Virus record (IMG/VR): IMGVR_UViG_3300032242_000723
Location: 186,001-250,000 of that record
Strand: one strand, 5' to 3'
Length of the DNA stretch: 64,000 nucleotides
The translations under genes were made by a program, and so were the position numbers. A model generated the notes under the pieces. It ran no database searches and was not told where the DNA came from. It saw only the letters and a program-made list of their open reading frames with translations. Shown in pieces: positions 40,620-64,000 of this stretch; within the stretch, counting starts at the first letter, position 1; each line of letters starts with the position of its first letter.

Positions 40620-40622
40620 GAT

Positions 40623-40630: not shown

Positions 40631-40652
40631 AAGATAACGGAGCAATTTAAAG

Positions 40653-41879: not shown

Positions 41880-41891
41880 TAGGAAGCACAG

Positions 41892-42871: not shown

Positions 42872-42879
42872 TATAAATA
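42872..42879 (+). promoter_or_regulatory. Canonical T4-type late promoter TATAAATA heading the glyco/radical SAM cluster
   Basis: Exact TATAAATA 16 nt upstream of ORF 42896, which has a GAGGA RBS. Confidence 0.75.
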
Positions 42880-42895
42880 CTCGTAAGAGGATCAG

Positions 42896-43201
42896 ATGGA
42901 TACCAAAACATTAATTGCAGACGCTAAAGCCAGATTCAATCACAACTCCGCTAAAGCATATCTTAAAGAAAAATATGAAGCAAAACTGTTCGTAGCAGAA
43001 CAAGGTGGCTTGTGGAAAGCCGACCAACAAACAATTGCTTTCTTACATGCTAGTCCAGCCCGTGAAGTTGTGATAGTTGACACCTTTGGAAATCCAGTAT
43101 TGGTTGACCCAAAATCTTTAGTAACGAAATTAGGGGAAACTTATGAGACCGTTATGCTTGAATGGCATACTGAATGGCAGGAACTTGAAGGTAAACGATG
43201 A
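42896..43201 (+). CDS. Hypothetical protein, first gene of modification operon
   Basis: Good RBS, ATGA overlap with next gene. Confidence 0.7.
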   Translation: MDTKTLIADAKARFNHNSAKAYLKEKYEAKLFVAEQGGLWKADQQTIAFLHASPAREVVIVDTFGNPVLVDPKSLVTKLGETYETVMLEWHTEWQELEGKR

Positions 43202-44013
43202 CTCGCGGAGTACTACTGTTCGCCTTTAACTCTCTCAAATATAACTACTATGAAATGGCATTACACACTGCCAAACGTGCTAATCACTTCTTGGGACTAC
43301 CAGTAACGCTTGTTACTGATGAAGAATCGTATCCAGATGATGAGACATATGTTTGGGATAAGGTGATTAAAGTAGTACCCGATAAAGATAACTTTAGAGA
43401 TTGGGGACAGTGGATCAACAAAGGCAGATACATGGCCTATGATCTTAGCCCATACGATGAGACTATTCTATTAGACGTAGATTACGTTATCAACTCTGAC
43501 AAACTACTGACAACCTTTAACATATATGAAGACTTTGCTTGTCACAATAAGACTAACTTTTTGATGCACCCTGATGCTTCGCAAGAGTTATTGTCAGCAT
43601 ACAGCTATGAGACATTGTGGGCCACTGTGGTTACATTCAAAAAGTCAACTAGGGCAGAGCAAATCTTTAGATCACTAGAAATGGTTCAGAAGAACTATGA
43701 TCACTATGCTAATATACATTCATTCATTGCTGGTGTATACCGTAATGACTATGCACTAACACTTGCGTTACGCATTGTTAACGGACACAGTACTAATCCT
43801 AGTGATGTAATACCATGGGACCTAGTGCATGTCGGTAAGAACACTCAAATCTATGCGAATACCACGGATGAGTTCAATACAGAATATACAGTAATGTTTG
43901 ACAACTGGCAGCGTGGTAAAATTCGCAAAGAGTATATCACTATCAAGGATATGGATTTCCACCTCATGAACAAGGATTTATTTAAGGAGATTATTAATGG
44001 AACTGACGACTAG
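43198..44013 (+). CDS. Glycosyltransferase, GT-A fold (GT8-like)
   Basis: SPYDETILLDVDY (DxD), RND.A motif. Confidence 0.7.
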   Translation: MTRGVLLFAFNSLKYNYYEMALHTAKRANHFLGLPVTLVTDEESYPDDETYVWDKVIKVVPDKDNFRDWGQWINKGRYMAYDLSPYDETILLDVDYVINSDKLLTTFNIYEDFACHNKTNFLMHPDASQELLSAYSYETLWATVVTFKKSTRAEQIFRSLEMVQKNYDHYANIHSFIAGVYRNDYALTLALRIVNGHSTNPSDVIPWDLVHVGKNTQIYANTTDEFNTEYTVMFDNWQRGKIRKEYITIKDMDFHLMNKDLFKEIINGTDD

Positions 44014-44224
44014 TATGTTAAATGTACAACCCTATATTACTGGAAACGCATTTGGCTATTTTAACCCAAGTACTCTTACTACGGCTTTTCCAGATTTTGT
44101 AGGTAAGTATAAGGCGATACCAGTATTTGACCCGATAGAAGCACCGTTCGGTGGGCATATACTAGAGTTTGAAAATAGTGCAGATAAGATGTGGTTTATA
44201 TTAAAGCATGTTAAACATGGATAA
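43997..44224 (+). CDS. Small protein, isolated member of the C-terminal-motif family
   Basis: Ends LEFENSADKMWFILKH, matching the 48-50 kb array motif; overlaps both flanking GT genes. Confidence 0.6.
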   Translation: MELTTSMLNVQPYITGNAFGYFNPSTLTTAFPDFVGKYKAIPVFDPIEAPFGGHILEFENSADKMWFILKHVKHG

Positions 44225-44972
44225 AGGTTTTGTAATAATGGCTCAAGGTGATGACTATGTTAAGTGTGCTGTAGCACTTGAGCGTAGCATCAAGAATGTA
44301 ATGCCAGATGCCAATGTAACGATCATTACTACAGAGATGCTTCCATATGGGGATCAAGCATCTGATACTGATTGGAAGTTACAAAACGATTGGCAGGTAT
44401 ATGAGAGCAGTCCGTACGAATACACGATCAAGTTAGAAGCCGATATGTATATCCCACGGTCTATTGACTTCTGGTGGGATATATTGAAAGATCGTGATGT
44501 TGTGGTATCTACTACAGCTAGAAATTTTAAGCAAGAGATAACGGGTATCAACGCATATCGTAGATTCATCGTTGATAACAATCTGCCAAACTGCTATAAC
44601 GGTATCACATATTTCCATAAGTCGGATACAGCCAAACAGTTCTACGAGACAGTGCGAACTATCTTTGAAAACTGGGGAGAGTTTCGTAATACATTAAAAT
44701 GTAACGTTGATGAACAAGCTACCACAGACTGGGTGTATGCACTCGCATGTCATATGATGGGAGTAGAAAATACCACTTTGCCTCATGCTGATTTTATGTC
44801 AATGGTACATATGAAACAGTTCATCAACGGTCTTCCAACTGAAAACTGGACAGACACCTTGATCTACGAGATTCTCCCACATACATTAAGAGTCAATACG
44901 ATTCCTCAAATGTATCCTTTCCACTATCATATCAAGTCATTTGCTGATACATTATTGGAGAATGTTAAATGA
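44217..44972 (+). CDS. Glycosyltransferase, GT-A fold (paralogue of 43198)
   Basis: SPYEYTIKLEADM, TD..YALA, HMK motifs; start probably MDKGF. Confidence 0.65.
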   Translation: MDKGFVIMAQGDDYVKCAVALERSIKNVMPDANVTIITTEMLPYGDQASDTDWKLQNDWQVYESSPYEYTIKLEADMYIPRSIDFWWDILKDRDVVVSTTARNFKQEITGINAYRRFIVDNNLPNCYNGITYFHKSDTAKQFYETVRTIFENWGEFRNTLKCNVDEQATTDWVYALACHMMGVENTTLPHADFMSMVHMKQFINGLPTENWTDTLIYEILPHTLRVNTIPQMYPFHYHIKSFADTLLENVK

Positions 44973-45310
44973 GTGATGAAGAACACGTAATCGTATGGCA
45001 AGCCCCAGAAATCATTGCACCTGAGTTTAGACTCTACTATGATGACAAGGGCTATCTCATTTGTTATACTTGTGAAAAACTTGATGGTAACTATATCGTC
45101 ATCGATGCACTAACATTCGCTGAAGGTAGACCAGATGTCAGAGTAGCAGATGGCAGACTTGTTAGAGCTAGTACTGGTTCGGTTGTCTCTAAACTACAAA
45201 TTGAACTTGACCCAGAATCTGGAAGTGTATTATGCGAAGTAGAAGACATCAGTATCATTACTGAAACAAATGGAAAATATTGGAAACTAAGGACCTATGA
45301 GCTTAGATAA
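44969..45310 (+). CDS. Hypothetical protein
   Basis: Coupled ORF with GGAG RBS. Confidence 0.65.
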   Translation: MSDEEHVIVWQAPEIIAPEFRLYYDDKGYLICYTCEKLDGNYIVIDALTFAEGRPDVRVADGRLVRASTGSVVSKLQIELDPESGSVLCEVEDISIITETNGKYWKLRTYELR

Positions 45311-46244
45311 TATAGTAGACATTGCTGATCTTGATGTGATTTATCTGTCCTATGATGAACCACAGAAGGAGGAGTTCTGGCTTAAGATTAAGAACATGGT
45401 ACCCTGGGCGGTTCGTGTTGATAGCGTTAAGGGATCAGATGCAGCACATAAAGCAGCAGCAGAAATGTCAACGACTGAACGCTTTATTCTCATTGACGGT
45501 GACAACATGCCCAACGAGAACTTCTTTAATCTGCAACTAGACTTCACTGACAAAGACCCTAGCTACCATCTAGCACAGTATCGTTGGAGAGCGATCAACT
45601 CTATCAATGGACTACGCTATGGTAATGGTGGCATGTCAAGCTGGACTAAGACTTATGTTGCGAATATGCACACACACGAGACTAGCGACGGGAGTGACGC
45701 TACAACGGTAGATTTCTGCATGGATTCTACTAATAGTTTGTATTGGAGTATGTACGACTGCTATTCAACTACGTATCCGAACTACACTCCTTTCCAAGCA
45801 TGGCGAGCAGGATTCCGTGAAGGTGTAAAGATGGTGCTTGATCGTGGCGCAAAGCCTAGCATTGAAGACCTCAAAGATAGAGTAGCATCACGCAATCTAA
45901 ACAATCTCACGATCTGGCAGAATGTTGGCATGGACGTAGAGAACGGTGCATGGGCTATTTATGGAGCAAGACTTGGTACTCATATGACTATGCTATCAGA
46001 CTGGGACTACAGAGACGTAGCATGGTTTGACAACTTTCCTGAACTATGGGAAAAGCATAAGACAAACCCTATTCATTACGCAGAAGAGATTGGCGAAGAC
46101 TTGCAAGACAAGCTCGGTCTACCCATCTGCACACTTGACGCAAAGCAGTCAGCATTCTTCAAGCGGCATTATAATGCTGACAAGCACAACTTGGGTCCCC
46201 TCGTTAAAGAGATGGACATTATCAGAAAAATAGAAGGATGGTAA
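45297..46244 (+). CDS. Glycosyltransferase-like protein (GT-A)
   Basis: YLSYDEP, FILIDGD (DxD), YGNGG, AWRAGFREGVK motifs. Confidence 0.6.
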   Translation: MSLDNIVDIADLDVIYLSYDEPQKEEFWLKIKNMVPWAVRVDSVKGSDAAHKAAAEMSTTERFILIDGDNMPNENFFNLQLDFTDKDPSYHLAQYRWRAINSINGLRYGNGGMSSWTKTYVANMHTHETSDGSDATTVDFCMDSTNSLYWSMYDCYSTTYPNYTPFQAWRAGFREGVKMVLDRGAKPSIEDLKDRVASRNLNNLTIWQNVGMDVENGAWAIYGARLGTHMTMLSDWDYRDVAWFDNFPELWEKHKTNPIHYAEEIGEDLQDKLGLPICTLDAKQSAFFKRHYNADKHNLGPLVKEMDIIRKIEGW

Positions 46245-46247
46245 GGT

Positions 46248-46727
46248 ATGAATAACTGGAAAGACTATGTGGGATATCAACCACTAAACGAAGAAGAATT
46301 ACCTAGAGCTTATTATTCCTTAGTTTATACTACTACAACAAATGAAGACGGATCATTAAACGTTTCTACTCGTATCAATACAGTAGCAATAGGCATATCT
46401 GAAATGACGTTGACTGAAAATGAAGTGGGGAAGGCAGTAGAAGATGTACTATCAACATTTCCAAAACGAGAAATCAAAAATATTGTTGAACTACAACGGG
46501 CTAAAAACGAGATTGCTCTTACTACGCGACACACCTTTCCGGATACTAACTTCAATGATGTTTGGTATTATAATGGTCCTGGATCAATCGACAGTGCAAT
46601 TTATGTTATCAGTTATATGGGGCATTATGCAGTTAAAAAGCATGTTGATTTTGAAAAGTATGGTTTTATTGTAACATCTACTCCCACAGCCAGTGAACAA
46701 CCTATCAAGTTTGTACCGCTAGAATAA
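46248..46727 (+). CDS. Hypothetical protein, faint resemblance to gp23 capsid C-terminal motifs
   Basis: RAKNEIALTTR and YNG...DSAI segments. Confidence 0.5.
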   Translation: MNNWKDYVGYQPLNEEELPRAYYSLVYTTTTNEDGSLNVSTRINTVAIGISEMTLTENEVGKAVEDVLSTFPKREIKNIVELQRAKNEIALTTRHTFPDTNFNDVWYYNGPGSIDSAIYVISYMGHYAVKKHVDFEKYGFIVTSTPTASEQPIKFVPLE

Positions 46728-48127
46728 TGTCAAACGAAACCAATAGAATCAAGGATATCCAGATCAGAGTAGAGAACGAGGCTACTCCTACATTCTGTAT
46801 GGCTAAGTGGCACCATGTGACATTATATCTACAAACTGGCGAAACACATTCTTGTTATCACCCACAACCACACAAGATTCCTTTTGCTGAACTCAAAGAT
46901 AATCCTTCTGCATTACACAATACAATGCACAAGAAACTTGAGCGTAAAGAGATGCTTGAAGGCAAGAAGCCAACTGGTTGCGAATATTGCTGGAAGATTG
47001 AAGCACTTGGCAAAGACTATATCTCTGATCGTCATATTAGAAACAGTTCTATCTTTACTGAAGAACGCTTTGAACAGACGGTCAGAGGACCCTGGGACCA
47101 GAACATCAACCCAGAATATCTTGAGATTAATTTTGGTAACGAGTGTAACTTTCAATGTGGTTACTGTCATCCAAAGTACTCTACTAAGTTCTATAAAGAG
47201 ATTGAGAAGTTCGGCCCAGTAGAAAGTGTAAAGAATCATCGCTGCGATATTGACTGGATGAAGTTATATCAGCGTGAAGAAGAAAATCCATATGTAGATG
47301 CATTCTGGAAGTGGTGGCCTGAACTTAGGCAGACACTAAACATCATGCGTGTTACTGGTGGCGAGCCAACACTGCACAAGAGTACATGGCAACTGTTAGA
47401 CAAGATTGAGGCAGACCCCATGCCCTGGTTAGAACTTAACATCAATAGCAATCTTGGTACAAAGAACATATTGATTGATCGTCTTGCAACTAAGGTAAAG
47501 AAGTTCTGTGACGAGGATAAGATTCAATCGTTCAAGTTGTTCACATCGCTTGACACCTGGGGACCTCGTGCCGAGTACATTCGCAATGGTCTTGACCTTG
47601 AACTATGGGAACAGAACTTCCACACATATCTGACAAAGAGTGACAGTCCAATCACATTCATGGTCACGTTCAATATCTTCTCAGTAACGACATTCAAATC
47701 ACTGTTAGAGAAGTTCTTAGAGTGGCGTAGACAGTATGGCTGGTACGAGCACAAGACAAGCGACAAGCATAGAGTACGCTTTGACACCCCATACCTTCGT
47801 GATCCATTACAATATGATATGAACATCCTTCCCAAAGAAGAGTACATGCCCTATATGCATGACGCATTGAAGTTCATGGAAGACAACCTAGACGATAATA
47901 GACACGACGCATTTACCACGATTGAGTACGAAAAGTTCAAAAGAGTGGTTGACTATATGGCAGAAACCGTTTACAGTGAAGACAAGTTAGTTGAAGGTCG
48001 TAGAGATTTCTACAACTGGTTCAATGAGTTGGATGATCGCAGAGAGACAGATTTCTTGTCAGTCTTTCCAGAAATGTTGGAGTTCTATAGGCTATGTCAA
48101 CAAACGAACTTATCAAACCCGATGTAA
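46727..48127 (+). CDS. Radical SAM enzyme with N-terminal twitch-like Fe-S domain
   Basis: CNFQCGYC, TGGEP; N-terminal FC..KW...SC.H...CEYC. Confidence 0.9.
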   Translation: MSNETNRIKDIQIRVENEATPTFCMAKWHHVTLYLQTGETHSCYHPQPHKIPFAELKDNPSALHNTMHKKLERKEMLEGKKPTGCEYCWKIEALGKDYISDRHIRNSSIFTEERFEQTVRGPWDQNINPEYLEINFGNECNFQCGYCHPKYSTKFYKEIEKFGPVESVKNHRCDIDWMKLYQREEENPYVDAFWKWWPELRQTLNIMRVTGGEPTLHKSTWQLLDKIEADPMPWLELNINSNLGTKNILIDRLATKVKKFCDEDKIQSFKLFTSLDTWGPRAEYIRNGLDLELWEQNFHTYLTKSDSPITFMVTFNIFSVTTFKSLLEKFLEWRRQYGWYEHKTSDKHRVRFDTPYLRDPLQYDMNILPKEEYMPYMHDALKFMEDNLDDNRHDAFTTIEYEKFKRVVDYMAETVYSEDKLVEGRRDFYNWFNELDDRRETDFLSVFPEMLEFYRLCQQTNLSNPM

Positions 48128-48357
48128 AAGCTGGCTGGTCTATGGATTACCAGATGATCCGTTTGGACAACTTCGCACGACGAGGATGGTCTAAGGATGC
48201 GAACGGTGTAACATACAGTGTCAGTGCGAGAGTGAGGCCTGAGATTGAACGCTGGGTTAGACAACAAAATATTGATATGTATGAAATATTAGATAATCGT
48301 TACATTTGGTTCAAGGACCCTGAACTTGAAACTCTCTTCCTGTTGAGATGGTCATGA
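48094..48357 (+). CDS. Array small protein 1
   Basis: Ends FKDPELETLFLLRWS. Confidence 0.7.
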   Translation: MSTNELIKPDVKAGWSMDYQMIRLDNFARRGWSKDANGVTYSVSARVRPEIERWVRQQNIDMYEILDNRYIWFKDPELETLFLLRWS

Positions 48358-48623
48358 TGGCGCTTTGTGAGACCGAGGCCGACGAGATCATTCGCACCGC
48401 CGCCGTCGATATATTCGGTGACGCCGGAAATCTGGACCACTATATTGATCGAGGTTGGCACAAAAAGACAAAAAGTACCTATATTATAGCTGCCCTTTTT
48501 CCTGAGATTAATGAGTGGATCAAGCAACAAAATCCTGACATGATTGAAGAAGTTGTAGAGGAATATTGTTATCGTTTCAAGAACCCTGAACTTGAAACCC
48601 TCTTTCTGTTAAGGTGGGGATGA
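48354..48623 (+). CDS. Array small protein 2
   Basis: ATGA-coupled; ends FKNPELETLFLLRWG. Confidence 0.75.
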   Translation: MMALCETEADEIIRTAAVDIFGDAGNLDHYIDRGWHKKTKSTYIIAALFPEINEWIKQQNPDMIEEVVEEYCYRFKNPELETLFLLRWG

Positions 48624-48850
48624 CTATAAAAAGACTACCATACGAAGTCATACTTGAAGACTTCCACGGGTCCGCACATGCTGAAGTATGGTGTGAAGAA
48701 CAGTTTGGTAAACGCTGGGGTCCATCTAGTGATCGTTTTGGTAACTGGGCGGCCCTTAGTGTCCCACGCCTCCTTTCAGCGCCTACTAAAATCAAGTTTC
48801 TCTTCGCAAATGAAAAGGACGCTATATTCTTTAAGTTGAGATGGTCATGA
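48620..48850 (+). CDS. Array small protein 3
   Basis: ATGA-coupled; ends FANEKDAIFFKLRWS. Confidence 0.75.
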   Translation: MTIKRLPYEVILEDFHGSAHAEVWCEEQFGKRWGPSSDRFGNWAALSVPRLLSAPTKIKFLFANEKDAIFFKLRWS

Positions 48851-49113
48851 AGTTTAAGTTACGAGAAAATACAAATCATGTAACCGATTTCGTGACCCAG
48901 GAACTAAAATTAAGATCCATATGGGAAAGAGGTTACGCATTTTGTGGAACGGCTTTGGGCAGGTACAAGGTTTACCAGCTAAGAAATGACGTTGCTGAAT
49001 GGGTGCATCAGCAAGATCCTACTAAGTGGACACGGTATGAAGTAGAGTACTCGCACGATGTTTACCACTTTAGCGATGAACTCATGATGCTACTAATATT
49101 AAGATGGTCATGA
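48847..49113 (+). CDS. Array small protein 4
   Basis: ATGA-coupled; ends FSDELMMLLILRWS. Confidence 0.75.
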   Translation: MKFKLRENTNHVTDFVTQELKLRSIWERGYAFCGTALGRYKVYQLRNDVAEWVHQQDPTKWTRYEVEYSHDVYHFSDELMMLLILRWS

Positions 49114-49361
49114 GTACAATAGCACAAAACAATAAGTTCATTCTTTTTCGCAAAAAGTTTCAGCGTCCCAAAGGCGGCAGCAAGAACATGTTTGTTGTCT
49201 CGCTATTGCTGCCTTATTATTATACCCAAGATGAACGATCAGAAGTACTAAACACTTTGGTATCCTTTAACGGACGAGAGTGGGGAAGTTTGTCTGCTGT
49301 ATTTCGCAAGAAAGTAGATGCTGAAAAGGCATGGATATTTATAACGTTGAAATGGGGATGA
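49110..49361 (+). CDS. Array small protein 5
   Basis: ATGA-coupled; ends FRKKVDAEKAWIFITLKWG. Confidence 0.75.
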   Translation: MSTIAQNNKFILFRKKFQRPKGGSKNMFVVSLLLPYYYTQDERSEVLNTLVSFNGREWGSLSAVFRKKVDAEKAWIFITLKWG

Positions 49362-49603
49362 CTAAGAAATATTTCATTCCTATTAGCGATAGTGAAAAAC
49401 GGTTCCGTCCCGGAAACTTTCCTTCTGGTACCAAATTCTATCTTACGATTGAAAGTTGGAGAAACTTTGTCAAGGCATGTGAGTATGATGACAAAGTAAT
49501 CAAAGTTTGGTTAGAAACCGAATATAACGCTAAGCTAATAAATGATGTTATTGTCTTTGAGGATGAAAAAGATAAAATCATGTGGTTATTGAGGTGGGGA
49601 TGA
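49358..49603 (+). CDS. Array small protein 6
   Basis: ATGA-coupled; ends FEDEKDKIMWLLRWG. Confidence 0.75.
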   Translation: MTKKYFIPISDSEKRFRPGNFPSGTKFYLTIESWRNFVKACEYDDKVIKVWLETEYNAKLINDVIVFEDEKDKIMWLLRWG

Positions 49604-50039: not shown

Positions 50040-50060
50040 ATAATATGATATATATTATGT

Positions 50061-52976: not shown

Positions 52977-52977
52977 A

Positions 52978-56940: not shown

Positions 56941-57728
56941 ATATCGACTTTAGTAAGTATAAGAGAATCTTTACTTTTGGATGCAGCTTCGCGAAATGGA
57001 CTTATCCGACTTGGGCTAATGTATTGAGTAAATGTTTGCCAGGGGCAGAATTCATCCATTTAGGACAATGCGGCGGCGGAAACTCGTATATCTCAAATAG
57101 AATGACTCAAGCAAATCGTACATATAATTTCTGTGAAACTGATCTAGTTGTCACAATGTGGACGACCTATTGCAGAGAAGATAGATTTGTCAACGGCAGA
57201 TGGCTGACACCTGGTAACATCTATTATCAAACAGACTATGATGAAAAGTTCGTGAAAAAGTTCTGCGATCCTGTAGGATATCTAGTCAAAGATTTGTCTA
57301 TTATCGATCTTGCGACTACGTACATGAGTACGTTACCTTGCGACTATATTGATATGCTAGCAGTTCCGTTAGACCATCAGGTTCTCGATATAGATGATAT
57401 TACATACAAAGATGTTATTCACACTTATAGAGAACTTATCGCTCACTTTGATAAACCAACAATGTTTGACTTTCTCGGGAAAGAATGGCACGGCGGGTAT
57501 ACTTATATTCGTAATCATAACAATGAAACAACTCCTAGATATGACTATCATCCTAACACTCTTCAATATTGCAATTATCTTAAAATAGTAGGATTTCCCT
57601 TGACTACAGTAGCAATTGAGTATGCTGAAGCTTCACACAATAAAGCTCTCTTACTTAAACATCAAAATGAGTTCGATGTAACCTTTGCAGACATCAACTT
57701 TAATTCAGGCTTTGTGTGGAATATTTAA
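56937..57728 (+). CDS. SGNH/GDSL-like acyl transferase or esterase
   Basis: FGCSF (block I), GGGN, DYHP. Confidence 0.55.
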   Translation: MNIDFSKYKRIFTFGCSFAKWTYPTWANVLSKCLPGAEFIHLGQCGGGNSYISNRMTQANRTYNFCETDLVVTMWTTYCREDRFVNGRWLTPGNIYYQTDYDEKFVKKFCDPVGYLVKDLSIIDLATTYMSTLPCDYIDMLAVPLDHQVLDIDDITYKDVIHTYRELIAHFDKPTMFDFLGKEWHGGYTYIRNHNNETTPRYDYHPNTLQYCNYLKIVGFPLTTVAIEYAEASHNKALLLKHQNEFDVTFADINFNSGFVWNI

Positions 57729-57729
57729 T

Positions 57730-58854
57730 ATGTCAATCAAGTTACTGTCAATTTGGGATTATTCTTTAAATATCAACGAATGCTTAGCAGATATAGAACT
57801 CAATCATCAAACGATTGATGAGATCATAATTGATCAAACACCTGAGCATCAGTATAATCAACTTTGTGCAGTTGAAACTGGCGTTGCTAGTGTAGTAGAA
57901 CTTGCAGGAAGGTATAACATACCTATAACTATATTGACCTCTGCTAGTACATTTGACCCAACCGTTAATAACTTCAACCATCCTACTGTAGATTGTCCAA
58001 CTTGGTGGCTATCCAGAACTCTGATATTATCGTTCTACTACCTTAGAACACTAGCTTTTCCCATTGATATGCTTGATGATACTATTGGTACTGGATACCC
58101 TATTCAACACTTGTTTATCTCTATGAACAATGTAGCACACTATCATCGATGTGTCTTTATCGACCTAATGGCCAAACATGATCTAATCGATTTAGGCATG
58201 ATAAGCTGGCGTGATGTGTTGCGTGAGTATGATAATAGTAGAGATACACTACCGAATAACATACTAGAAAGTATTCAAGCTAACGTATATTCTTTCAAGT
58301 ATTGGACTCCTATAAGAATGATATTAGATCAACCACTAGACGGCACATCGACCGTGCCAAATCAATATAAGATACCAGAACAATATCATAACTCATTCAT
58401 GCAAATTGTCACAGAATCCACGACTGATCGTTTCTTTATTACAGAGAAAACAGCTACACCCTTATTCTATAACAAGTTGTTCCTAGTTGTTGGAAGTAGA
58501 TACTTTCATCGTAATTTAAAGTCACTTGGCTTTGAACTGTATGACGAGTTGTTTGACTATATGTTTGATGATGAAGAAAGTATTGAACTACGTGTTGAAG
58601 GCGTTGCCCAAAACTTAAACAAGTTTAGAGACAAAACTAATGAAGAGTTAGAACAGATTCTATTGTCGGTCGGTGATAAGATCACCCGTAACAGAAAACT
58701 AGCAGTACAGTATGCACTTAACCCGCCTGAAATATTTAAGGCATTAGCTAATAGGTTAGAAGATGACGGTCACCCATCTCAGTCTACACATTTAATTCAA
58801 ATTACTAAAGGTATTACACAATGTATTAAGAATTTGGGTGAGAGAACAAAGTGA
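57730..58854 (+). CDS. Glycosyltransferase-like protein (same family as 55822)
   Basis: F.SMN...HYHR, IVTES, ITEKT..P, GF.LYDE.FDY.FD motifs. Confidence 0.55.
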   Translation: MSIKLLSIWDYSLNINECLADIELNHQTIDEIIIDQTPEHQYNQLCAVETGVASVVELAGRYNIPITILTSASTFDPTVNNFNHPTVDCPTWWLSRTLILSFYYLRTLAFPIDMLDDTIGTGYPIQHLFISMNNVAHYHRCVFIDLMAKHDLIDLGMISWRDVLREYDNSRDTLPNNILESIQANVYSFKYWTPIRMILDQPLDGTSTVPNQYKIPEQYHNSFMQIVTESTTDRFFITEKTATPLFYNKLFLVVGSRYFHRNLKSLGFELYDELFDYMFDDEESIELRVEGVAQNLNKFRDKTNEELEQILLSVGDKITRNRKLAVQYALNPPEIFKALANRLEDDGHPSQSTHLIQITKGITQCIKNLGERTK

Positions 58855-59648
58855 TCGACTTAAGTAAGTATAATCGTATCTTTACTTTTGGATGTAGCTT
58901 TACGAACTGGTATTATCCAACTTGGGCTAATATTGTTCATCAATGTGCACCTGATACTACTATGATTAATTTAGGTCAAGGCGGGGGAGGAAACTCTTTT
59001 ATTGCAAATAGAATGACACAGGCCAATAGAACCTATAACTTCTGTGAAACTGATCTAGTTATGGTAATGTGGTCTACTCTATGCAGAGAAGATAGATATT
59101 ATAATCTTAGATGGAGAACGGTAGGCAATGTGTTCTCGCAAAGTGAATATGATGAGAAGTTCGTAAAGAGTTACTGTGATCCAATCGGTTATCTGATCAA
59201 GGACCTATCAACTATTGACCTTGCAACATCATATATGAAGAATCTACCATGCGATTACTTTGACATGTTGTCGGTTCCATTCAATCATCAGATTATTGAT
59301 GAAAAAGATGAAGTGTACAAAGATGTTATACATACATATAAAGATTTGATATCACAATTTCCACCTTCTATGTATGATTTAATGGGATCATATTTCGGTA
59401 TACTAAAGTATGCTATGGACGACGGTAAAATAATGGAAGACTATCATCCGAATCCAAAAACTTTTGTTGACTATCTACAGAAGATAAAATTTCCGGTAAC
59501 TCCTGCAGCAATTGTATATGCAGAAGATGCATATAGCAAAGTGCAAACAGTTAAACATTATTTTTGGTTCGCTGCGACATTCCCAGAAATACAACATGCA
59601 TCTTCTAACTATTATACATATCAACATGAATGGAAAATCAAAGAATGA
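58851..59648 (+). CDS. SGNH/GDSL-like protein (close paralogue of 56937)
   Basis: FGCSF, GGGN, NRMTQANRTYNFCETDLV shared, DYHP. Confidence 0.55.
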   Translation: MIDLSKYNRIFTFGCSFTNWYYPTWANIVHQCAPDTTMINLGQGGGGNSFIANRMTQANRTYNFCETDLVMVMWSTLCREDRYYNLRWRTVGNVFSQSEYDEKFVKSYCDPIGYLIKDLSTIDLATSYMKNLPCDYFDMLSVPFNHQIIDEKDEVYKDVIHTYKDLISQFPPSMYDLMGSYFGILKYAMDDGKIMEDYHPNPKTFVDYLQKIKFPVTPAAIVYAEDAYSKVQTVKHYFWFAATFPEIQHASSNYYTYQHEWKIKE

Positions 59649-60829
59649 CTAAAGTAGCAATGATTGGTGTAGGAAAGCTAGGTCAAGACTGTGCAGAGAT
59701 CATGGCACAACAGTACGATGTCGTAGGCTATGACGTAGAGGTAAGAACACCTTCGTTTCCTATGCGTTATACTATACAAGAAGCCGTACAAGATAGAGAC
59801 ATTATCTTTATCGCTGCACCCACTCCACATGACCCTATGTACGGTGGAGAGACACCTACTAGCCATCTACCCAATAAAGACTTTGACTATACTATTGTCA
59901 AGGATATTCTTAGCGTAGTCAACCAGTTTGTTAACAAAGATCAGCTTGTTGTCCTTATTAGCACAGTATTGCCAGGCACTATTCGTAGACAGTTAAAGCA
60001 TTATATTACCAACAGTAGATTTATCTATAACCCATACTTGATCGCAATGGGCACGATCAAATATGACATGGTGAACCCTGAAATGATTATTATCGGGACT
60101 GAAGATGGCTCGGCAACAGGTGACGCTAAAGAACTAATTGATTTCTATCAACCACTCATGCAGAACGATCCACGTATCGAGATCGGAACCTGGGATGAAG
60201 CTGAAGCTATCAAGATATTCTATAATACATTTATCTCTGCTAAAGTCGCAATTGTTAACATGATACAAGATGTTGCCGAACGCAATGGTAATATGTGCGT
60301 TGATGTTGTCACCGGTGCATTAGAACGTTCAACATATCGTATCACGGGTCCAGCTTATATGAAGGCAGGTATGGGCGATGGTGGTGCATGTCATCCCCGT
60401 GATAATATCGCACTACGACATCTTGCTGAAGAGCTTGATCTCGGCTACGATTTGTTTGATAGTATCATGCGAGCAAGAGAAGTGCAAGCCGAAAATATGG
60501 CTATGACTATTCTTAACTACGGAAAGAATGTGACTATCGTGGGCAAAGCTTATAAGCCCGGAGTCCATTATACTAACGGGTCGTCTTCTATGCTTGTGGG
60601 ATATTATATTGAACAACAAGGTGGCACAGTAAACTACTACGATGAACACACTGGTGATACTGATATGAAAGCCGACACTACTGATGTATACTTGATCGGT
60701 TATTGGGATGACTATGTAGAGAAGCTAACGTTCCCAATCAATAGCACAGTAATAGACCCTTGGCGTAAGATGACATCTGAACAACATAAGGGCAAGATCG
60801 TCCATTACGGTAATACTAGGAAGATATAA
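59645..60829 (+). CDS. ugd: UDP-glucose/GDP-mannose 6-dehydrogenase
   Basis: GVGKLG Rossmann motif, PTP, STV.PGT, YNP, AE.IK...N.F...K, GGAC.PRD, AYK. Confidence 0.9.
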   Translation: MTKVAMIGVGKLGQDCAEIMAQQYDVVGYDVEVRTPSFPMRYTIQEAVQDRDIIFIAAPTPHDPMYGGETPTSHLPNKDFDYTIVKDILSVVNQFVNKDQLVVLISTVLPGTIRRQLKHYITNSRFIYNPYLIAMGTIKYDMVNPEMIIIGTEDGSATGDAKELIDFYQPLMQNDPRIEIGTWDEAEAIKIFYNTFISAKVAIVNMIQDVAERNGNMCVDVVTGALERSTYRITGPAYMKAGMGDGGACHPRDNIALRHLAEELDLGYDLFDSIMRAREVQAENMAMTILNYGKNVTIVGKAYKPGVHYTNGSSSMLVGYYIEQQGGTVNYYDEHTGDTDMKADTTDVYLIGYWDDYVEKLTFPINSTVIDPWRKMTSEQHKGKIVHYGNTRKI

Positions 60830-61446
60830 TGGGAATGAACTTTACGTTAATTAAACAGTACATAGAACAACTAACCCTCGAAGGCGACATATTAGAGATA
60901 GGCTCTAATAGAGGCGAGGGAAGTACCACGATTTTAGGTCAAGTTGCACTTCATAACAATAGAGTACTATATTCAGTCGATATGGATTCAATGCTCATTG
61001 ACGGAAACAAGAATTTTAATAACTCGGCTTCAGAAATTCTTCCGATTCAATTCTATAACATGAAGGGCGAAGATTTCCTTAAACAGAATAAACACCTAAA
61101 GTTCAGTGTAGTTCTACTAGATAACTTTGACTGGGACTCGTGTGCAGGATTGCCAAATACTAGTCAAGATTGGATGAAAATCATCATGGATCAAAAAGCT
61201 ATGTATCTAAGATTGATAGATACCGACATGACTAACTTAAATAGCCAAATGACTCATTTAGAGCAAGCAATGTTGTGCATTGAGTTGTTGACTGACAATT
61301 CTGTTATTATATGTGATGACACCTATAGAAGAGTTGACGGAACATATGATGGTAAGTGCGGCGCCGCAGTCCCGTATTTGATGTTACATGGATTTGAAGT
61401 CATACATTCTGATGGTTTAGGAACTATTTTAAGTAGAAGAAAATAA
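60829..61446 (+). CDS. Class I SAM-dependent methyltransferase
   Basis: ILEIGS..GEGST, LD.FDW, ICDDT motifs. Confidence 0.7.
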   Translation: MGMNFTLIKQYIEQLTLEGDILEIGSNRGEGSTTILGQVALHNNRVLYSVDMDSMLIDGNKNFNNSASEILPIQFYNMKGEDFLKQNKHLKFSVVLLDNFDWDSCAGLPNTSQDWMKIIMDQKAMYLRLIDTDMTNLNSQMTHLEQAMLCIELLTDNSVIICDDTYRRVDGTYDGKCGAAVPYLMLHGFEVIHSDGLGTILSRRK

Positions 61447-61448
61447 AT

Positions 61449-62630
61449 ATGGAAACAGTTGAACTCGACAGATATCGTCAACAGGTTGGTTACCCTGATC
61501 AGGTAAATAGATACCTAGATTCATTATGGCTAGAACTAAAACCTCATGAGGATACATGCTATTTCATCTACGCAGGCCTCAATGCAGTATACACTATATT
61601 ATTACGTAGTGATGAATCTATCATAGAACAAATCAAAAATGCTATCCTATCTGGTAAACGTAATATACTGTTTGACTGTTGCACAGAAGGTTTAGATATT
61701 AGAATCATCACTAGACTCAACAGTATAGTAGATATTGCTAGTTCATTATTTCCTGAAATCAAATTCTTTCTTATTACAGGCGCGTCAAACGGTGAAGATG
61801 CATATATAAAGGCATGTGAACAACTACAACTGACACCTAATATGAGTATAATTTCTTGTAGGTTCTTTGAGTTCAAAGCCAAAGAAGATTACGTTAAAGA
61901 ATTTATACCAACTGAGTATGCCGTGACGGTCAGACCTAAAACATATGTATGCTTGAACAATGTGCTTAGATCGCATAGACTTAGACTATTAGACGGTTTA
62001 CTATATGAAAATCTAGTAAACGACGATTGTTATTACTCGTTTTATAATCCTGCACTACCCTTTAATACTGATACTACACTGCAAGAACAAATAGTTGAAT
62101 GTTTACCTAATATACATAAGAACATAGATTATGTTGGTAAGCTTAGACTGAATTTCGATGATAATAGAACTAATCCAGTGGACGTTATACCAGAAGACAT
62201 GCCACTATTCGATGATACGTACTTCTCTCTAGTTACTGAAACAATGTACTATGATTGTACTGTACCTAAATATAAACTCGGATATGATCTACCATTCTTG
62301 AACTGTACATTCTTCTCTGAGAAGGTTTACAAGCCAATTATCATGATGCATCCTTTTCTATTGGTCGCTCGCCCACACTCTATTAGAATGCTCAAAGAAC
62401 ATGGCTTCAAAACGTTTCATCCCTATATAGATGAGAGCTATGACAGTATAGAAGAAGATGGCGATAGAATGCAAGCTATCATCGCTGAAGTTAAGAGATT
62501 ATCTAACCAAACTCCATTGGAATGGTTAATATGGTGTTCTAATGTTAAATCTATCGTAGAATATAATCAAAAATATCTCAAGGAAAACGTCAGTTACATT
62601 GTGAATAAAGATTTGTCAGTATTCAAGTGA
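61449..62630 (+). CDS. Glycosyltransferase-like protein (third member of 55822 family)
   Basis: CLN...R.HR, YFSLVTET, SEKVYKP, HPF, DESYD. Confidence 0.55.
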   Translation: METVELDRYRQQVGYPDQVNRYLDSLWLELKPHEDTCYFIYAGLNAVYTILLRSDESIIEQIKNAILSGKRNILFDCCTEGLDIRIITRLNSIVDIASSLFPEIKFFLITGASNGEDAYIKACEQLQLTPNMSIISCRFFEFKAKEDYVKEFIPTEYAVTVRPKTYVCLNNVLRSHRLRLLDGLLYENLVNDDCYYSFYNPALPFNTDTTLQEQIVECLPNIHKNIDYVGKLRLNFDDNRTNPVDVIPEDMPLFDDTYFSLVTETMYYDCTVPKYKLGYDLPFLNCTFFSEKVYKPIIMMHPFLLVARPHSIRMLKEHGFKTFHPYIDESYDSIEEDGDRMQAIIAEVKRLSNQTPLEWLIWCSNVKSIVEYNQKYLKENVSYIVNKDLSVFK

Positions 62631-62632
62631 TT

Positions 62633-62639
62633 CTAAATA
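62633..62639 (+). promoter_or_regulatory. Late-promoter-like CTAAATA
   Basis: Intergenic, upstream of the B12 radical SAM gene. Confidence 0.5.
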
Positions 62640-62668
62640 GCTGTATGACTCTAAAGGAATTTTAACAG

Positions 62669-64000
62669 TTGGTAGATTTCAAGCTAACCTCTTTGGCTAA
62701 CAAAAATACCAAGCCAAAAGAAAGACCAACTGTAGACATAACTGATTCTAGTCATCAATCAATGCTAGAAGCCATCTCTCCCTATGTTAAGCCTGCCGTT
62801 CAGAAAAATCTAACACCGATTTATGTAGATTACAAGACACGCAAGTCATCGATGGTACTTGTCACCTGTCCACTTTGGAGTCCTTATATTCCCCCGTTAG
62901 CAATAGCTAGACTGTCGGGTATAGCTAAAGCAGCAGGATACGAGACACATATCATGGATTTGAATGTGAAGGCTTATACTATTTTCCGTGATGATTGGAT
63001 CGTACACCAAAAGGTACCATTCACATTGTGGGACACATCATCAGCATGGCATTGGGCAGGCGGCATATATTATAATGATGTTCATCCTGTACTAGAACCT
63101 ATGCTCATGGAAGCAGTTGATCAGATCATTTCACTAAAGCCCTCAATAGTTAATTTCACTGTATACAGCAGTAGTGAAGAACCCACTAAGTGGATGTGTC
63201 AAGAGATCAAGCGTAGAGACCCTAATATACTAATCGCAGTAAATGGACCTAATGTACACAAAGCTTGGTATACTATCCAACCCTACTATGATTATGTTAT
63301 TGTCGGTGAAGCTGAGAAAAATCTATTGGTAATGCTTACTGAGATTGAAGAAGGTAAACTTCATACTGAACCAAGAGTATTAACACAGCCAGAGAACGAA
63401 CGTATCAATATTAATAATCTTCCTATGCCAGACTATGACTCAATCGATTTCTCATTGTATGAAATACCTAACGGCATTAATAGTGAAATTAGTAGGGGAT
63501 GTACTGCTAAATGTACCTTTTGTGATGAAACACACTTTGTACGTTATAGACAACGGCAAGCAATAGATTTGATTACAGAAATAGAGTGGCTCTATTATAA
63601 TAAAGGTACTGACGTAATATGGTTTATTGATAGTCTTATCAATGGTGACTTAAATGAACTAAGAGCGTTTGCGATAGCTTTACGAGAAAAAGACTTAAAG
63701 GTTAAGTTCACTGGATATGCCCGATGCGACGGTAGAATGAATCTAGAATATCTACAAGATTTAGCAGACGGCGGCTGTATCATGTTTAATTTTGGATGCG
63801 AAAGTGGAAGCCAAAAAGTACTTAACGATATGCACAAGGGTGTGACTATTGCCGAGATGGAGCAGAACTTCATCGACTGTAAGAAGGTTGGTATCTACTG
63901 TGCTACGAACTGGGTAGTTGGATTTCCTACTGAGAACTTTCAAGATTACTCTGACACGATGACATTCATGTGGCGTATGCGTAATATGAACATCAATAAT
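62669..64000 (+). CDS. Cobalamin-binding radical SAM protein (partial, runs off window)
   Basis: TTG start after AAGGA; frame open to window end. PP.A.A.L...A, DLN, GP, GE.E, P.PDY, SRGCTAKCTFC, FGCESGS..VL..M.KG, GFPTE motifs. Confidence 0.88.
   Translation, partial: MVDFKLTSLANKNTKPKERPTVDITDSSHQSMLEAISPYVKPAVQKNLTPIYVDYKTRKSSMVLVTCPLWSPYIPPLAIARLSGIAKAAGYETHIMDLNVKAYTIFRDDWIVHQKVPFTLWDTSSAWHWAGGIYYNDVHPVLEPMLMEAVDQIISLKPSIVNFTVYSSSEEPTKWMCQEIKRRDPNILIAVNGPNVHKAWYTIQPYYDYVIVGEAEKNLLVMLTEIEEGKLHTEPRVLTQPENERININNLPMPDYDSIDFSLYEIPNGINSEISRGCTAKCTFCDETHFVRYRQRQAIDLITEIEWLYYNKGTDVIWFIDSLINGDLNELRAFAIALREKDLKVKFTGYARCDGRMNLEYLQDLADGGCIMFNFGCESGSQKVLNDMHKGVTIAEMEQNFIDCKKVGIYCATNWVVGFPTENFQDYSDTMTFMWRMRNMNINN

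What the first reader, a model, noticed from the sequence alone, without database searches (positions are those of the whole stretch)
42872..64000. Late-expressed >21 kb glycan-tailoring cluster with six radical SAM enzymes directly after the tail genes
Seen: behind an exact TATAAATA late promoter run three GT-A-like and three GT-B-like glycosyltransferases, UDP-glucose dehydrogenase, a methyltransferase and two SGNH-like proteins. There are also five twitch-type radical SAM enzymes and a B12-binding one, nearly all translationally coupled. Established: twitch radical SAM enzymes such as BtrN and NeoN oxidise or epimerise sugars, and class B radical SAM enzymes methylate unactivated carbons. 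Inference: a phage-encoded pathway for an unusual glycan. Late timing and linkage to fibre genes favour decoration of virion proteins or the host surface over DNA hypermodification. No thymidylate-synthase-like or nucleotide-kinase genes lie in the window.
Basis: partly seen in the sequence, partly recalled or inferred. Interest (0 to 1): 0.75.

Follow-up and report, generated by a model that had tools for sequence, protein, structure and literature searches.

The report
Phage radical-SAM-rich glycan tailoring operon
An uncultured 333-kb T4-like jumbo phage carries, right behind its baseplate and fibre genes and behind a conserved late-type promoter, a tightly packed operon of about 29 kb encoding sugar-adding and sugar-modifying enzymes, six of them radical SAM enzymes; it probably builds an unusual glycan, most plausibly on virion proteins, but the target has not been tested.

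Summary
The observation largely holds. TATAAATA sits at 42872-42879, 16 nt before the first ATG. The site is conserved as CTAAATAC in 12 related phage contigs, and ATAAATA is 14-fold enriched upstream of this genome's genes.

- The operon continues to about 72069 in window-equivalent coordinates, adding a third SGNH-like gene, a membrane protein, a NodU/CmcH carbamoyltransferase and a 1444-aa protein.
- Ten tandem small paralogous ORFs lie at 48094-50482.
- The module is conserved in an abundant phage lineage.

The genome's only thymidylate-synthase-family gene is a canonical ThyA, which weakens the DNA-glycosylation reading. The target (virion protein or host envelope) is unresolved. Similar fibre/GT8/UGDH/radical-SAM "host recognition clusters" were described in pelagimyophages in 2020.

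The parts
39999..42845 (+). Context: three fibre-like late genes (206, 408 and 317 aa). The last two are 23-27% Ser+Thr. They are candidate acceptors.
   Evidence: PHROG tail-fibre and virion-protein hits plus a weak Peptidase_G2 intramolecular-chaperone domain in 40653-41879. Composition. A GATAAATA motif lies before 40653. The genes are syntenic with the cluster in 15 contigs.
42872..42879 (+). T4-type late-promoter-like element TATAAATA(C), 16 nt before the ATG at 42896.
   Evidence: Sequence. ATAAATA is 14-fold enriched in the 60 nt upstream of genes. Twelve relatives keep CCATCTAAATAC at the same place while the rest of the spacer diverges.
42896..43201 (+). Conserved 101-aa protein of unknown role.
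   Evidence: No Pfam or PHROG hit. Orthologues are 57-70% identical in 13 contigs.
43198..44013 (+). Retaining-type GT-A glycosyltransferase (GT8/GT6-like), DVD motif.
44208..44972 (+). Second GT-A, a distant paralogue of 43198-44013, with EAD in place of DxD.
   Evidence: Cross-family BLAST hit at E 1.7e-7. The joint alignment keeps the second Asp invariant. PHROG 1903 at 2e-9.
44969..45310 (+). Conserved 113-aa protein of unknown role.
   Evidence: No family hit. Orthologues are present in 12 contigs.
45297..46244 (+). Highly conserved DxD protein; a putative glycosyltransferase domain whose fold was not tested.
   Evidence: More than 8000 homologues, none with a Pfam domain. 1164 cluster representatives. 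D67 and D69 are near-invariant. Homologues are fused to GT1 (EryCIII_C/UDPGT) domains, and one has a weak PF00535 hit. hhalign against the GT-A family is not significant.
46248..46727 (+). 159-aa ORF absent from most relatives.
   Evidence: No hits. In relatives the 45297 orthologue abuts the first radical SAM gene.
46727..48127 (+). N-twitch radical SAM 1.
   Evidence: NF033640 at 319.8 bits, cut-off 170. Orthologues are about 80% identical.
48094..50482 (+). Array of ten overlapping small paralogous ORFs (61-91 aa) ending in ...FLLRW(G/S). A lineage-specific insertion.
   Evidence: The array is absent from most relatives. Further copies lie elsewhere in the genome and in L010 and L014.
50479..51747 (+). 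N-twitch radical SAM 2 (variable or absent in some relatives).
   Evidence: NF033640 at 346.9 bits. Presence or absence across contigs.
51744..52976 (+). N-twitch radical SAM 3.
   Evidence: NF033640 at 377.5 bits. Invariant Cys16, Cys35, Cys76 and Cys79 plus C131-X3-C135-X2-C138 and GGE.
52978..53593 (+). Three small ORFs (94, 56 and 55 aa) of unknown role.
   Evidence: Gene calls on the identical ENA contig. No Pfam hit for the 94-aa ORF.
53583..54857 (+). N-twitch radical SAM 4.
   Evidence: NF033640 at 353.2 bits.
54842..55825 (+). Radical SAM with a C-terminal Cys-rich (twitch/SPASM-like) region.
   Evidence: Pfam Radical_SAM at 29.6 bits. Invariant C25, C29, C32, GGE and C264, C283, C306, C311, C313 across 13 orthologues down to 24% identity.
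55822..56940 (+). GT-B glycosyltransferase 1.
56937..57728 (+). SGNH-like protein 1 (putative acyl esterase or transferase).
   Evidence: Atlas neighbours carry DUF6071 or Lipase_GDSL. Invariant G15-C16-S17, G93-N94 and H205; near-invariant G46 and D203. No Pfam or PDB hit.
57730..58854 (+). GT-B glycosyltransferase 2 (paralogue).
   Evidence: BLASTP E 1e-10 to 55771-56940. Included in alignment A1.
58851..59648 (+). SGNH-like protein 2 (56% identical to protein 1).
59645..60829 (+). Nucleotide-sugar 6-dehydrogenase (UDP-glucose/GDP-mannose dehydrogenase family).
   Evidence: PF03721 at 57.1 bits and PF00984 at 57.2 bits, both over cut-off. TIGR03026 at 148.8 bits, below its 189.8 cut-off. A GGACHPRD catalytic-Cys motif is visible in the sequence.
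60829..61446 (+). Probable class I SAM methyltransferase.
   Evidence: Methyltransf_24 at E 5.7e-4, 21.2 bits, below the 26.3 cut-off. An ILEIGSNRGEGS motif I is visible in the sequence.
61449..62630 (+). GT-B glycosyltransferase 3 (paralogue).
   Evidence: BLASTP E 2e-30 to 55771-56940.
62669..64000 (+). B12-binding (class B-like) radical SAM, 739 aa, running on to window-equivalent 64888.
   Evidence: PF02310 at 32.7 bits and PF04055 at 62.2 bits. The best NCBIfam matches are RiPP C-methyltransferase, ladderane-lipid and PhpK families, all below their cut-offs. Downstream lie an SGNH-like gene, a five-TM protein, a NodU/CmcH carbamoyltransferase and a 1444-aa protein.

Best explanation
This is a late transcription unit of about 29 kb in a T4-like jumbo phage. 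It encodes a cytoplasmic line for assembling and tailoring a glycan.

Proposed steps:
- A nucleotide-sugar dehydrogenase makes a uronic-acid donor.
- Two or three GT-A (GT8-like, retaining) and three GT-B transferases build an oligosaccharide.
- The oligosaccharide, or its nucleotide-sugar precursors, is then tailored by an O-carbamoyltransferase, a SAM methyltransferase and three SGNH-like acyl esterases or transferases.
- Six radical SAM enzymes add further changes. Four are N-terminal-twitch enzymes and one carries a C-terminal Cys cluster; these would do C-H chemistry such as oxidation, epimerisation, dehydration or C-C bond formation. One is cobalamin-dependent and would do C-methylation.

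Because the genes are co-transcribed with, and always linked to, the Ser/Thr-rich fibre-like genes, the most likely acceptor is a virion protein of the fibre or baseplate, giving progeny a decorated adsorption apparatus.

Shown here: the gene content, the folds, the family memberships, the synteny and the promoter footprint. Inferred: that the enzymes act in one pathway, every chemical step, the late timing and the acceptor.

My odds are about 0.85 that it is a glycan pathway. Given that, about 0.45 that the acceptor is a virion protein.
For: - Folds: GT-A and GT-B.
- Sugar-specific enzymes: dehydrogenase and NodU/CmcH carbamoyltransferase, PF16861 at 1e-49 and PF02543 at 8e-35.
- Radical SAM set. 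The N-terminal twitch region aligns to BtrN's twitch domain at E 6e-4.
- All enzymes lack TM segments.
- No Und-P, flippase or polymerase family appeared in any scan.
- Genes are tightly coupled, and a late-type motif occurs only at the head of the cluster and before the baseplate and fibre genes. The motif position is conserved in 12 relatives.
- The order fibre-like genes, 101-aa gene, two GT-A genes, 113-aa gene, DxD protein, radical SAM genes, GT-B is kept in 15-17 contigs at 60-83% identity.
- A distant clade (about 30% identity) keeps the radical SAMs, B12-rSAM, dehydrogenase, carbamoyltransferase, GT-B and SGNH-like genes.
- The genome encodes an A-type Fe-S carrier, as noted for radical-SAM-rich T4-like genomes (PMC5332604).
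- Among the best GT-A fold matches are protein-glycosylating enzymes: glycogenin, AgtA, UGGT and GlyE.
Against: - No experiment or expression data exist; no RNA run was listed.
- Fold does not give the acceptor. LgtC (LOS), MurG, WcaL and T4 DNA glucosyltransferases score as well as the protein glycosyltransferases.
- The N-twitch family has no characterised member, and its cellular contexts are heterogeneous: an ACP/ketosynthase/GT2 lipid cluster in Paenibacillus, and a B12-rSAM plus CAAX protease in Halobacteriovorax.
- A five-TM protein sits in the operon.
- Authors of the closest published description read such clusters as host O-chain modification (PMC7029224).
- The third GT-A, the SGNH-like proteins and the methyltransferase are not firmly established.
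Confidence: 0.45

Rival explanations
1. Host-envelope remodelling. The enzymes modify the host's LPS O-chain, capsule or another surface glycan during infection. This could block superinfection or stop progeny from re-adsorbing to debris. It is the reading proposed for the 'host recognition clusters' of pelagimyophages and cyanomyophages.
For: - PMC7029224 describes fibre genes with GT8 transferases, UDP-glucose dehydrogenase and radical SAM cassettes, and favours O-chain modification.
- GT8 and GT-B fold neighbours include LgtC, WcaL, MurG and LpxB.
- A five-TM protein lies in the operon.
- The distal part of the cluster (GT-B and SGNH-like genes) varies between relatives, as surface-glycan genes do.
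Against: - No initiating phosphoglycosyl transferase, flippase, polymerase or GtrA/GtrB-type family was detected.
- The membrane protein matches no family and is not kept in the distant clade.
- The only recognisable promoter is of the late type, shared with structural genes. That is late for exclusion to help.
- The core (GT-A genes plus radical SAMs) is highly conserved rather than hypervariable.
Confidence: 0.25
2. A soluble product. The cluster makes a free tailored glycoside or pseudo-oligosaccharide, aminoglycoside-like or nucleoside-sugar-like, used against competitors or host defences and not attached to any macromolecule.
For: The enzyme palette mirrors aminoglycoside and nucleoside-antibiotic tailoring: a twitch radical SAM (BtrN-like domain), a B12 radical SAM, a NodU/TobZ-family carbamoyltransferase, GT-B transferases and a BlsE-like weak match. 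A cyanophage paper has noted 'antibiotic synthesis' genes, including a radical SAM (PMC12801897).
Against: - No cyclitol synthase, aminotransferase or exporter was detected in the cluster.
- Strict linkage to fibre genes and a late promoter is not expected for a metabolite pathway.
- Several GT8-like enzymes are more typical of glycoconjugates.
Confidence: 0.1
3. The radical SAM enzymes are peptide or protein maturases rather than sugar enzymes. They would modify either the ten small tandem ORFs in a RiPP-like way, or virion proteins directly.
For: - SPASM/twitch enzymes are mainstays of RiPP maturation (PMC11002830).
- Ten small ORFs with a conserved C-terminus sit between radical SAM 1 and 2.
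- The best NCBIfam match of the B12 enzyme is the RiPP C-methyltransferase family.
- The Halobacteriovorax homologue sits next to a B12-rSAM and a CAAX protease.
Against: - The small-ORF array is absent from most relatives that keep all the radical SAM genes.
- The same small-ORF family occurs at two unrelated genome sites.
- No leader-peptide-binding (RRE) domain or protease was detected.
- The radical SAM genes are conserved together with sugar enzymes even in the distant clade.
Confidence: 0.1
4. DNA hypermodification. The transferases glycosylate modified bases in phage DNA, as T4 alpha- and beta-glucosyltransferases do, and the other enzymes elaborate the attached sugar.
Against: - The 92%-complete genome has a single thymidylate-synthase-family gene. 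It is a canonical ThyA: NF002497 at 350.8 bits, over the 327 cut-off. No hydroxymethylase was found.
- The promoter type is late and the genes are linked to fibre genes.
- GT8-like GT-A enzymes are not known DNA glucosyltransferases (own knowledge).
Confidence: 0.04

Closest known systems
'Host recognition cluster' of pelagimyophages and cyanomyophages (Zaragoza-Solas et al. 2020, PMC7029224)
   Same: It is a T4-like aquatic myophage region next to the tail-fibre genes. It holds GT8 glycosyltransferases, UDP-glucose 6-dehydrogenase and radical SAM gene cassettes. Its function is inferred, not tested.
   Different: - Here the genome is a 333-kb jumbo phage.
- The proximal core (GT-A genes plus 4-5 radical SAMs) is strongly conserved rather than hypervariable.
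- The radical SAMs belong to the N-twitch family, which tblastn found in only 6 of 50,697 phage records.
- A carbamoyltransferase and a B12 radical SAM belong to the unit.
Mycobacteriophage virion glycosylation (Freeman et al. 2023, cited in PMC12619734)
   Same: Phage-encoded glycosyltransferases decorate structural proteins of the virion. This is the mechanism I favour here.
   Different: - Those systems use one or two transferases on capsid and tail-tube C-termini of siphophages of Actinobacteria.
- No radical SAM, carbamoyl or B12 chemistry is involved.
- There the glycan was demonstrated; here nothing has been shown.
Virus-encoded capsid or fibril glycosylation clusters of chloroviruses and mimiviruses (own knowledge)
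   Same: These are large viral gene clusters that make nucleotide sugars, transfer them and methylate or acylate the product, independently of host glycosylation machinery. GT8-like giant-virus proteins are structural neighbours of the GT-A here.
   Different: They are eukaryotic viruses, no radical SAM tailoring is known in them, and they have different transferase families.
Aminoglycoside and nucleoside-antibiotic tailoring enzymes: BtrN (twitch radical SAM), GenK-type B12 radical SAM methylases, TobZ/NodU carbamoyltransferases
   Same: They offer the same chemical toolbox acting on sugars. The N-terminal twitch region aligns to BtrN's twitch domain. The carbamoyltransferase has both NodU/CmcH domains.
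   Different: - The twitch domain here is N-terminal, a permuted order.
- No equivalog cut-off is reached for any characterised enzyme.
- No cyclitol or aminotransferase genes are present.
T4 alpha/beta-glucosyltransferases (DNA glucosylation)
   Different: No hydroxymethyl-pyrimidine pathway is present in the genome, and the context is late and structural.

Membership tests
NCBIfam NF033640 N_Twi_rSAM (twitch domain N-terminal to the radical SAM core) | Full-length score over the curated cut-off (170 bits) | tested here: met
   319.8, 346.9, 377.5 and 353.2 bits for the four genes. The whole genome holds exactly these four.
NCBIfam NF033640 N_Twi_rSAM | CX3CX2C SAM cluster plus Cys ligands for one auxiliary cluster in the N-terminal domain | tested here: met
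   Invariant C131, C135 and C138 with GGE, and invariant C16, C35, C76 and C79, in 27 sequences. The Pfam SPASM hit lies N-terminal to Radical_SAM.
NCBIfam NF033640 N_Twi_rSAM | Known substrate or reaction | not testable with these tools
   No paper holds the family name. Cellular contexts are heterogeneous.
Class B (cobalamin-dependent) radical SAM | B12-binding domain followed by the radical SAM core | tested here: met
   PF02310 at 32.7 bits (cut-off 32.1) and PF04055 at 62.2 bits.
Class B (cobalamin-dependent) radical SAM | Membership of a characterised methylase equivalog | tested here: not met
   The best match is TIGR03975 at 98 bits, below its 281.85 cut-off. All others are also below cut-off.
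GT-A fold, GT8-like retaining glycosyltransferase | Single Rossmann-like GT-A fold matching solved GT8/GT6 enzymes | tested here: met
GT-A fold, GT8-like retaining glycosyltransferase | DxD metal and nucleotide-sugar motif | tested here: met
   LLDVDYV in 43198-44013. The second Asp (D95) is invariant across both subfamilies. 44208-44972 has EAD.
GT-A fold, GT8-like retaining glycosyltransferase | Sequence-level membership (Pfam Glyco_transf_8 or CAZy GT8) | tested here: not met
   No Pfam or NCBIfam hit. The PDB profile matches to glycogenins are only E 0.09-1.6.
GT-A-like assignment of 45297-46244 | GT-A fold or a significant profile match | tested here: inconclusive
hhalign probability is below 1% and only the DxD stretch aligns. 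There is no PDB hit.
GT-B fold glycosyltransferase | Two Rossmann-like domains matching solved GT-B enzymes over the full length | tested here: met
GT-B fold glycosyltransferase | Sequence family (Pfam or CAZy) | tested here: not met
   No Pfam, NCBIfam or PHROG hit. It is a viral-only family in the Atlas.
UDP-glucose/GDP-mannose dehydrogenase family | N-terminal NAD domain and central domain over the Pfam cut-offs; catalytic Cys | tested here: met
   57.1 and 57.2 bits. GGACHPRD is visible in the sequence.
UDP-glucose/GDP-mannose dehydrogenase family | Equivalog-level identity as UDP-glucose 6-dehydrogenase | tested here: not met
   TIGR03026 scores 148.8 against a 189.8 cut-off, and the Ugd equivalogs are far below their cut-offs. 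The substrate is therefore open.
SGNH/GDSL hydrolase superfamily | Blocks I (GxS), II (G), III (GxN) and V (DxxH) in order | tested here: inconclusive
   Invariant G15-C16-S17, G93-N94 and H205, with near-invariant G46 and D203 (DxH rather than DxxH). Atlas neighbours carry DUF6071 or Lipase_GDSL. There is no Pfam or PDB hit.
NodU/CmcH carbamoyltransferase | Both Carbam_trans_N and Carbam_trans_C domains | tested here: met
   121.3 and 168.4 bits. PHROG 1601 at 6e-96. The NodU equivalog itself is not reached, at 128.8 against 1000.
T4-type late promoter | TATAAATA-like -10 element upstream of late genes, enriched and conserved | tested here: met
   14-fold enrichment of ATAAATA upstream of genes. 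The motif is present before the baseplate, fibre and cluster heads and is positionally conserved as CTAAATAC in relatives.
T4-type late promoter | Late timing and gp55/gp33-dependent transcription | not testable with these tools
   No RNA run was listed. I did not search for gp55.
RiPP cluster (radical SAM maturase plus precursor) | Precursor genes co-conserved with the maturases | tested here: not met
   The array is missing in most relatives, and the ORF family is dispersed in the genome.
Phage DNA glycosylation system | Hydroxymethyl-pyrimidine synthase (a thymidylate synthase homologue) in the genome | tested here: not met
   The only PF00303 member is a canonical ThyA. The genome is 92% complete, so absence is not absolute.

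The most novel reading that the evidence does not exclude
The phage decorates its own fibre or baseplate proteins with an oligosaccharide whose sugars are rewritten by five twitch-type radical SAM enzymes and a cobalamin-dependent one (C-methylated, epimerised, oxidised or C-C-linked sugars, further carbamoylated and acylated). That would be the first radical-SAM-tailored virion glycan. It would also be the first assigned function for the N-terminal-twitch radical SAM family, in a phage lineage that is very abundant in metagenomes.
Probability: 0.3. Interest if true: 0.85.

Novelty: new variant of a known kind. Interest (0 to 1): 0.6.

Why it matters
Virus-encoded glycosylation is established for giant viruses and for a few mycobacteriophages. 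For the abundant aquatic T4-like phages, the many transferase and radical SAM genes beside the fibre genes have only been described and guessed at.

This locus is a clean, conserved, compact example with a definable core. It contains four paralogues of an uncharacterised radical SAM family whose members are each kept as orthologues. That pattern implies successive, non-redundant steps.

The finding turns a vague 'AMG' observation into testable questions: which macromolecule carries the glycan, and what sugar chemistry does the N-twitch family perform? If the target is the adsorption apparatus, the pathway bears on host range and on how virions evade receptors, debris or defences. If the target is the host surface, it bears on superinfection exclusion. 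Either way it is a source of new sugar-modifying radical enzymes.

Tried and rejected
- Nearest phage records: megablast of the cluster against 50,697 phage records gave no match. tblastn with radical SAM 3 found only 6 records (Vibrio schizoT4-like phages, Ralstonia RsoM2USA, one marine SAG virus). All are annotated as hypothetical or 'radical SAM', so annotation transfer failed.\n- RiPP reading of the small-ORF array: rejected as the main explanation, because the array is not co-conserved with the radical SAM genes and the ORF family is dispersed in the genome.\n- Cellular context of N-twitch radical SAMs: many 'MAG' hits are probably mis-binned phage contigs; L127 has the same phage gene order. 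Genuine cellular contexts disagree with each other, so no function could be transferred.\n- The 45297 family gave nothing significant in profile-against-PDB or hhalign comparisons.\n- The SGNH-like family gave no Pfam or PDB hit even with a 30-sequence profile.\n- Sigma-70-like promoter and terminator scans were at chance level.\n- The RNA run search listed none.\n- complex prediction was not used. It was repeated with A7.\n- The literature search for the family name returned nothing, as did the search for radical SAM together with virion glycan.

Full report
WHERE THE WINDOW LIES

The window is bases 186001-250000 of a 333,115-bp virus record that is 92% complete by CheckV. The same sequence occurs in an ENA metagenome scaffold of 333,583 bp.

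The genome encodes a T4-type major capsid protein (PF07068, E 2e-98). Upstream of the finding lies a T4-like baseplate block. It holds gp5-like hub/lysozyme, gp25/gp53-like and gp6-like wedge proteins (the gp6-like match is PHROG 10646, E 2.5e-253). These are followed by a 6605-aa ORF and three fibre-like genes. One of the fibre-like genes has a weak intramolecular-chaperone domain. 'Directly after the tail genes' is therefore correct.

THE PROMOTER

TATAAATA is at 42872-42879, followed by AAGAGGA and the ATG at 42896. The exact octamer is not enriched: there are 2 in the window against 6.7 expected, and 27 in the genome against about 38 expected.

The heptamer ATAAATA, however, is the most enriched word in the 60 nt upstream of genes. 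It occurs before 51 of 371 genes, a 14-fold enrichment, usually as GATAAATAC. Within the window it precedes only the heads of the baseplate units (7538, 16655), a fibre-like gene (40653), one minus-strand gene and this cluster. No further copy precedes a gene until beyond the cluster.

In 12 related contigs the same spot reads CCATCTAAATAC(T), while the surrounding spacer diverges. CTAAATA is itself enriched upstream of genes. This is a phylogenetic footprint of a T4-type late promoter. Timing itself remains an inference, because no RNA run was listed.

GENE CONTENT

Radical SAM enzymes:
- Four genes are strong members of NCBIfam NF033640 (N_Twi_rSAM), scoring 320-378 bits against a cut-off of 170.
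- In these four, Pfam places the SPASM/twitch hit N-terminal to the radical SAM core.
- Twenty-seven family members share four invariant N-terminal Cys, the CX3CX2C motif and GGE.
- The N-terminal region aligns to BtrN's twitch domain at E 6e-4.
- A fifth radical SAM (54842-55825) lacks that domain. It has five invariant C-terminal Cys, even in 24%-identical orthologues.
- The sixth has a B12-binding domain and is 739 aa long, ending 888 bases beyond the window.

Glycosyltransferases:
- None of them gave a Pfam hit, so I tested them by structure.
- 44208-44972 is a distant paralogue of that GT-A and shares the invariant second Asp of the DxD motif.
  - It has a near-invariant DxD.
  - It belongs to a very large family without any Pfam domain.
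  - In other phages it is fused to GT1-type GT-B domains.
  - Profile comparisons are not significant.

Other enzymes:
- The dehydrogenase is a bona fide member of the UDP-glucose/GDP-mannose dehydrogenase family, but it lies below every equivalog cut-off.
- The methyltransferase call is weak.
- The SGNH-like pair rests on language-model neighbours and a conserved S-G-N-H-type pattern. It has no Pfam or PDB support.

EXTENT OF THE CLUSTER

The unit does not stop at the window end. After the B12 enzyme come four more genes:
- a third SGNH-like gene;
- a 167-aa protein with five hydrophobic segments;
- a NodU/CmcH-family carbamoyltransferase;
- a 1444-aa protein whose C-terminus resembles 45297-46244.

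A near-consensus sigma-70-type promoter follows that last ORF. The cluster is therefore about 29 kb, from 42872 to roughly 72069 in window-equivalent coordinates.

CONSERVATION

Seventeen IMG/VR contigs at 72-85% identity for radical SAM 3 keep a fixed gene order. The order is: fibre-like genes, 101-aa gene, GT-A, GT-A, 113-aa gene, DxD protein, N-twitch radical SAMs (three to five), the fifth radical SAM, then a GT-B gene.

Each N-twitch paralogue has its own orthologues, which points to distinct roles. The distal genes (GT-B, SGNH-like and others) vary between relatives.

A distant clade, about 30% identical, keeps the radical SAMs, the B12 enzyme, the dehydrogenase, the carbamoyltransferase, a GT-B and an SGNH-like gene. 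It adds GT2-like and APS-kinase-like genes; I read these from their N-terminal sequences only.

The lineage is abundant in metagenomes. Among 50,697 isolate phage records, only six carry a recognisable homologue.

THE SMALL-ORF ARRAY

The array is absent from most relatives. The ORF family has other copies at two unrelated genome sites. It is therefore an insertion of an expanding small-protein family, not an obligate substrate of the radical SAM enzymes.

WHAT THE CLUSTER MOST LIKELY DOES

The combination of enzymes is best read as one pathway for a heavily tailored glycan. It comprises a nucleotide-sugar dehydrogenase, five or six transferases of two fold classes, a sugar-type carbamoyltransferase, a methyltransferase, putative acyl esterases or transferases, and six radical SAM enzymes.

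All enzymes lack membrane segments. No lipid-carrier machinery was detected. The acceptor is therefore cytoplasmic or at the inner face of the membrane.

Four points favour a virion protein as acceptor, by inference only:
- the conserved late-type promoter;
- translational coupling of the genes;
- invariable linkage to the Ser/Thr-rich fibre-like genes;
- the conserved, non-hypervariable core.

RIVAL READINGS

- Host-envelope remodelling is the published guess for comparable 'host recognition clusters' (PMC7029224). It remains a serious rival.
- DNA glycosylation is weakened. The only thymidylate-synthase-family gene in the genome is a canonical ThyA.
- A soluble glycoside cannot be excluded.
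- A peptide-directed role for the radical SAMs cannot be excluded either.

SUPPORTING DETAIL AND PRIOR WORK

The genome carries an A-type Fe-S carrier. This matches the earlier remark that T4-like environmental genomes rich in radical SAM genes also carry Fe-S assembly genes (PMC5332604).

The N-twitch family has no characterised member and no literature under its name. Its cellular contexts are heterogeneous.

VERDICT

The kind of region has been described before in related aquatic myophages. This conserved, radical-SAM-dominated version in a jumbo phage is a new variant, and its target and chemistry are open.

Noticed in passing
window 20023-39840 (+): A single 6605-aa ORF sits between the gp6-like baseplate wedge gene and the fibre-like genes. 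Neither half has a Pfam hit, and the DNA has no tandem repeats. It may be a giant baseplate or fibre protein.
   Followed up: partly
window 48094-50482 (+); also genome 72442-73801 and 268053-268400; L010 7154-9405; L014 8492-8752: A family of 61-91-aa proteins occurs in overlapping tandem arrays. They share a conserved C-terminus, F(K/E)(D/N)E.D...F(L/W)LLRW(G/S). Ten copies are inserted between two radical SAM genes, and the function is unknown.
   Followed up: partly
L009 5735-10069 (genome 253735-258069), just past the window: A 1444-aa protein carries at least five copies of an 'FDFSW(H/R)PD..EP.YIY.WG' motif. Its C-terminal domain resembles 45297-46244 but lacks the DxD. It has no family hit.
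   Followed up: partly
genome 56059-56919 (+) and 151288-152886 (-), outside the window: Two further radical SAM genes lie elsewhere in the genome. One is QueE-like, below cut-offs, and may hint at 7-deazaguanine chemistry. The other is a second B12-binding radical SAM.
   Followed up: partly
genome 270416-272743, about 20 kb past the window: A canonical thymidylate synthase is followed by an NDP-sugar 4,6-dehydratase/epimerase-like SDR. The SDR could feed a deoxy sugar into the glycan pathway.
   Followed up: no
L009 16876-19432 (genome 264876-267432): A MoxR/CobS-like AAA ATPase sits next to a VWA/DUF2201 protein. In cyanophages such pairs are discussed as cobalt-chelatase-like. The genome has two B12-dependent radical SAMs.
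   Followed up: no
genome 105792-106094: An A-type Fe-S cluster carrier (PF01521, 64.9 bits) is encoded by the phage. No IscU/NifU was found.
   Followed up: yes
L127 (NCBI MAG contig labelled Haliscomenobacter, 183 kb) and L047, L054: Contigs binned into bacterial MAGs carry the same phage gene order or near-identical genes. They are probably mis-binned phage DNA. The bins could still hint at Bacteroidota hosts.
   Followed up: partly
L126 (Paenibacillus polysaccharolyticus): A cellular N-twitch radical SAM lies inside a cluster of ACP, ketosynthase, ketoreductase, dehydratase, thioesterase, GT2, PPTase and ABC-exporter genes. That looks like a glycolipid or polyene-like pathway.
   Followed up: no
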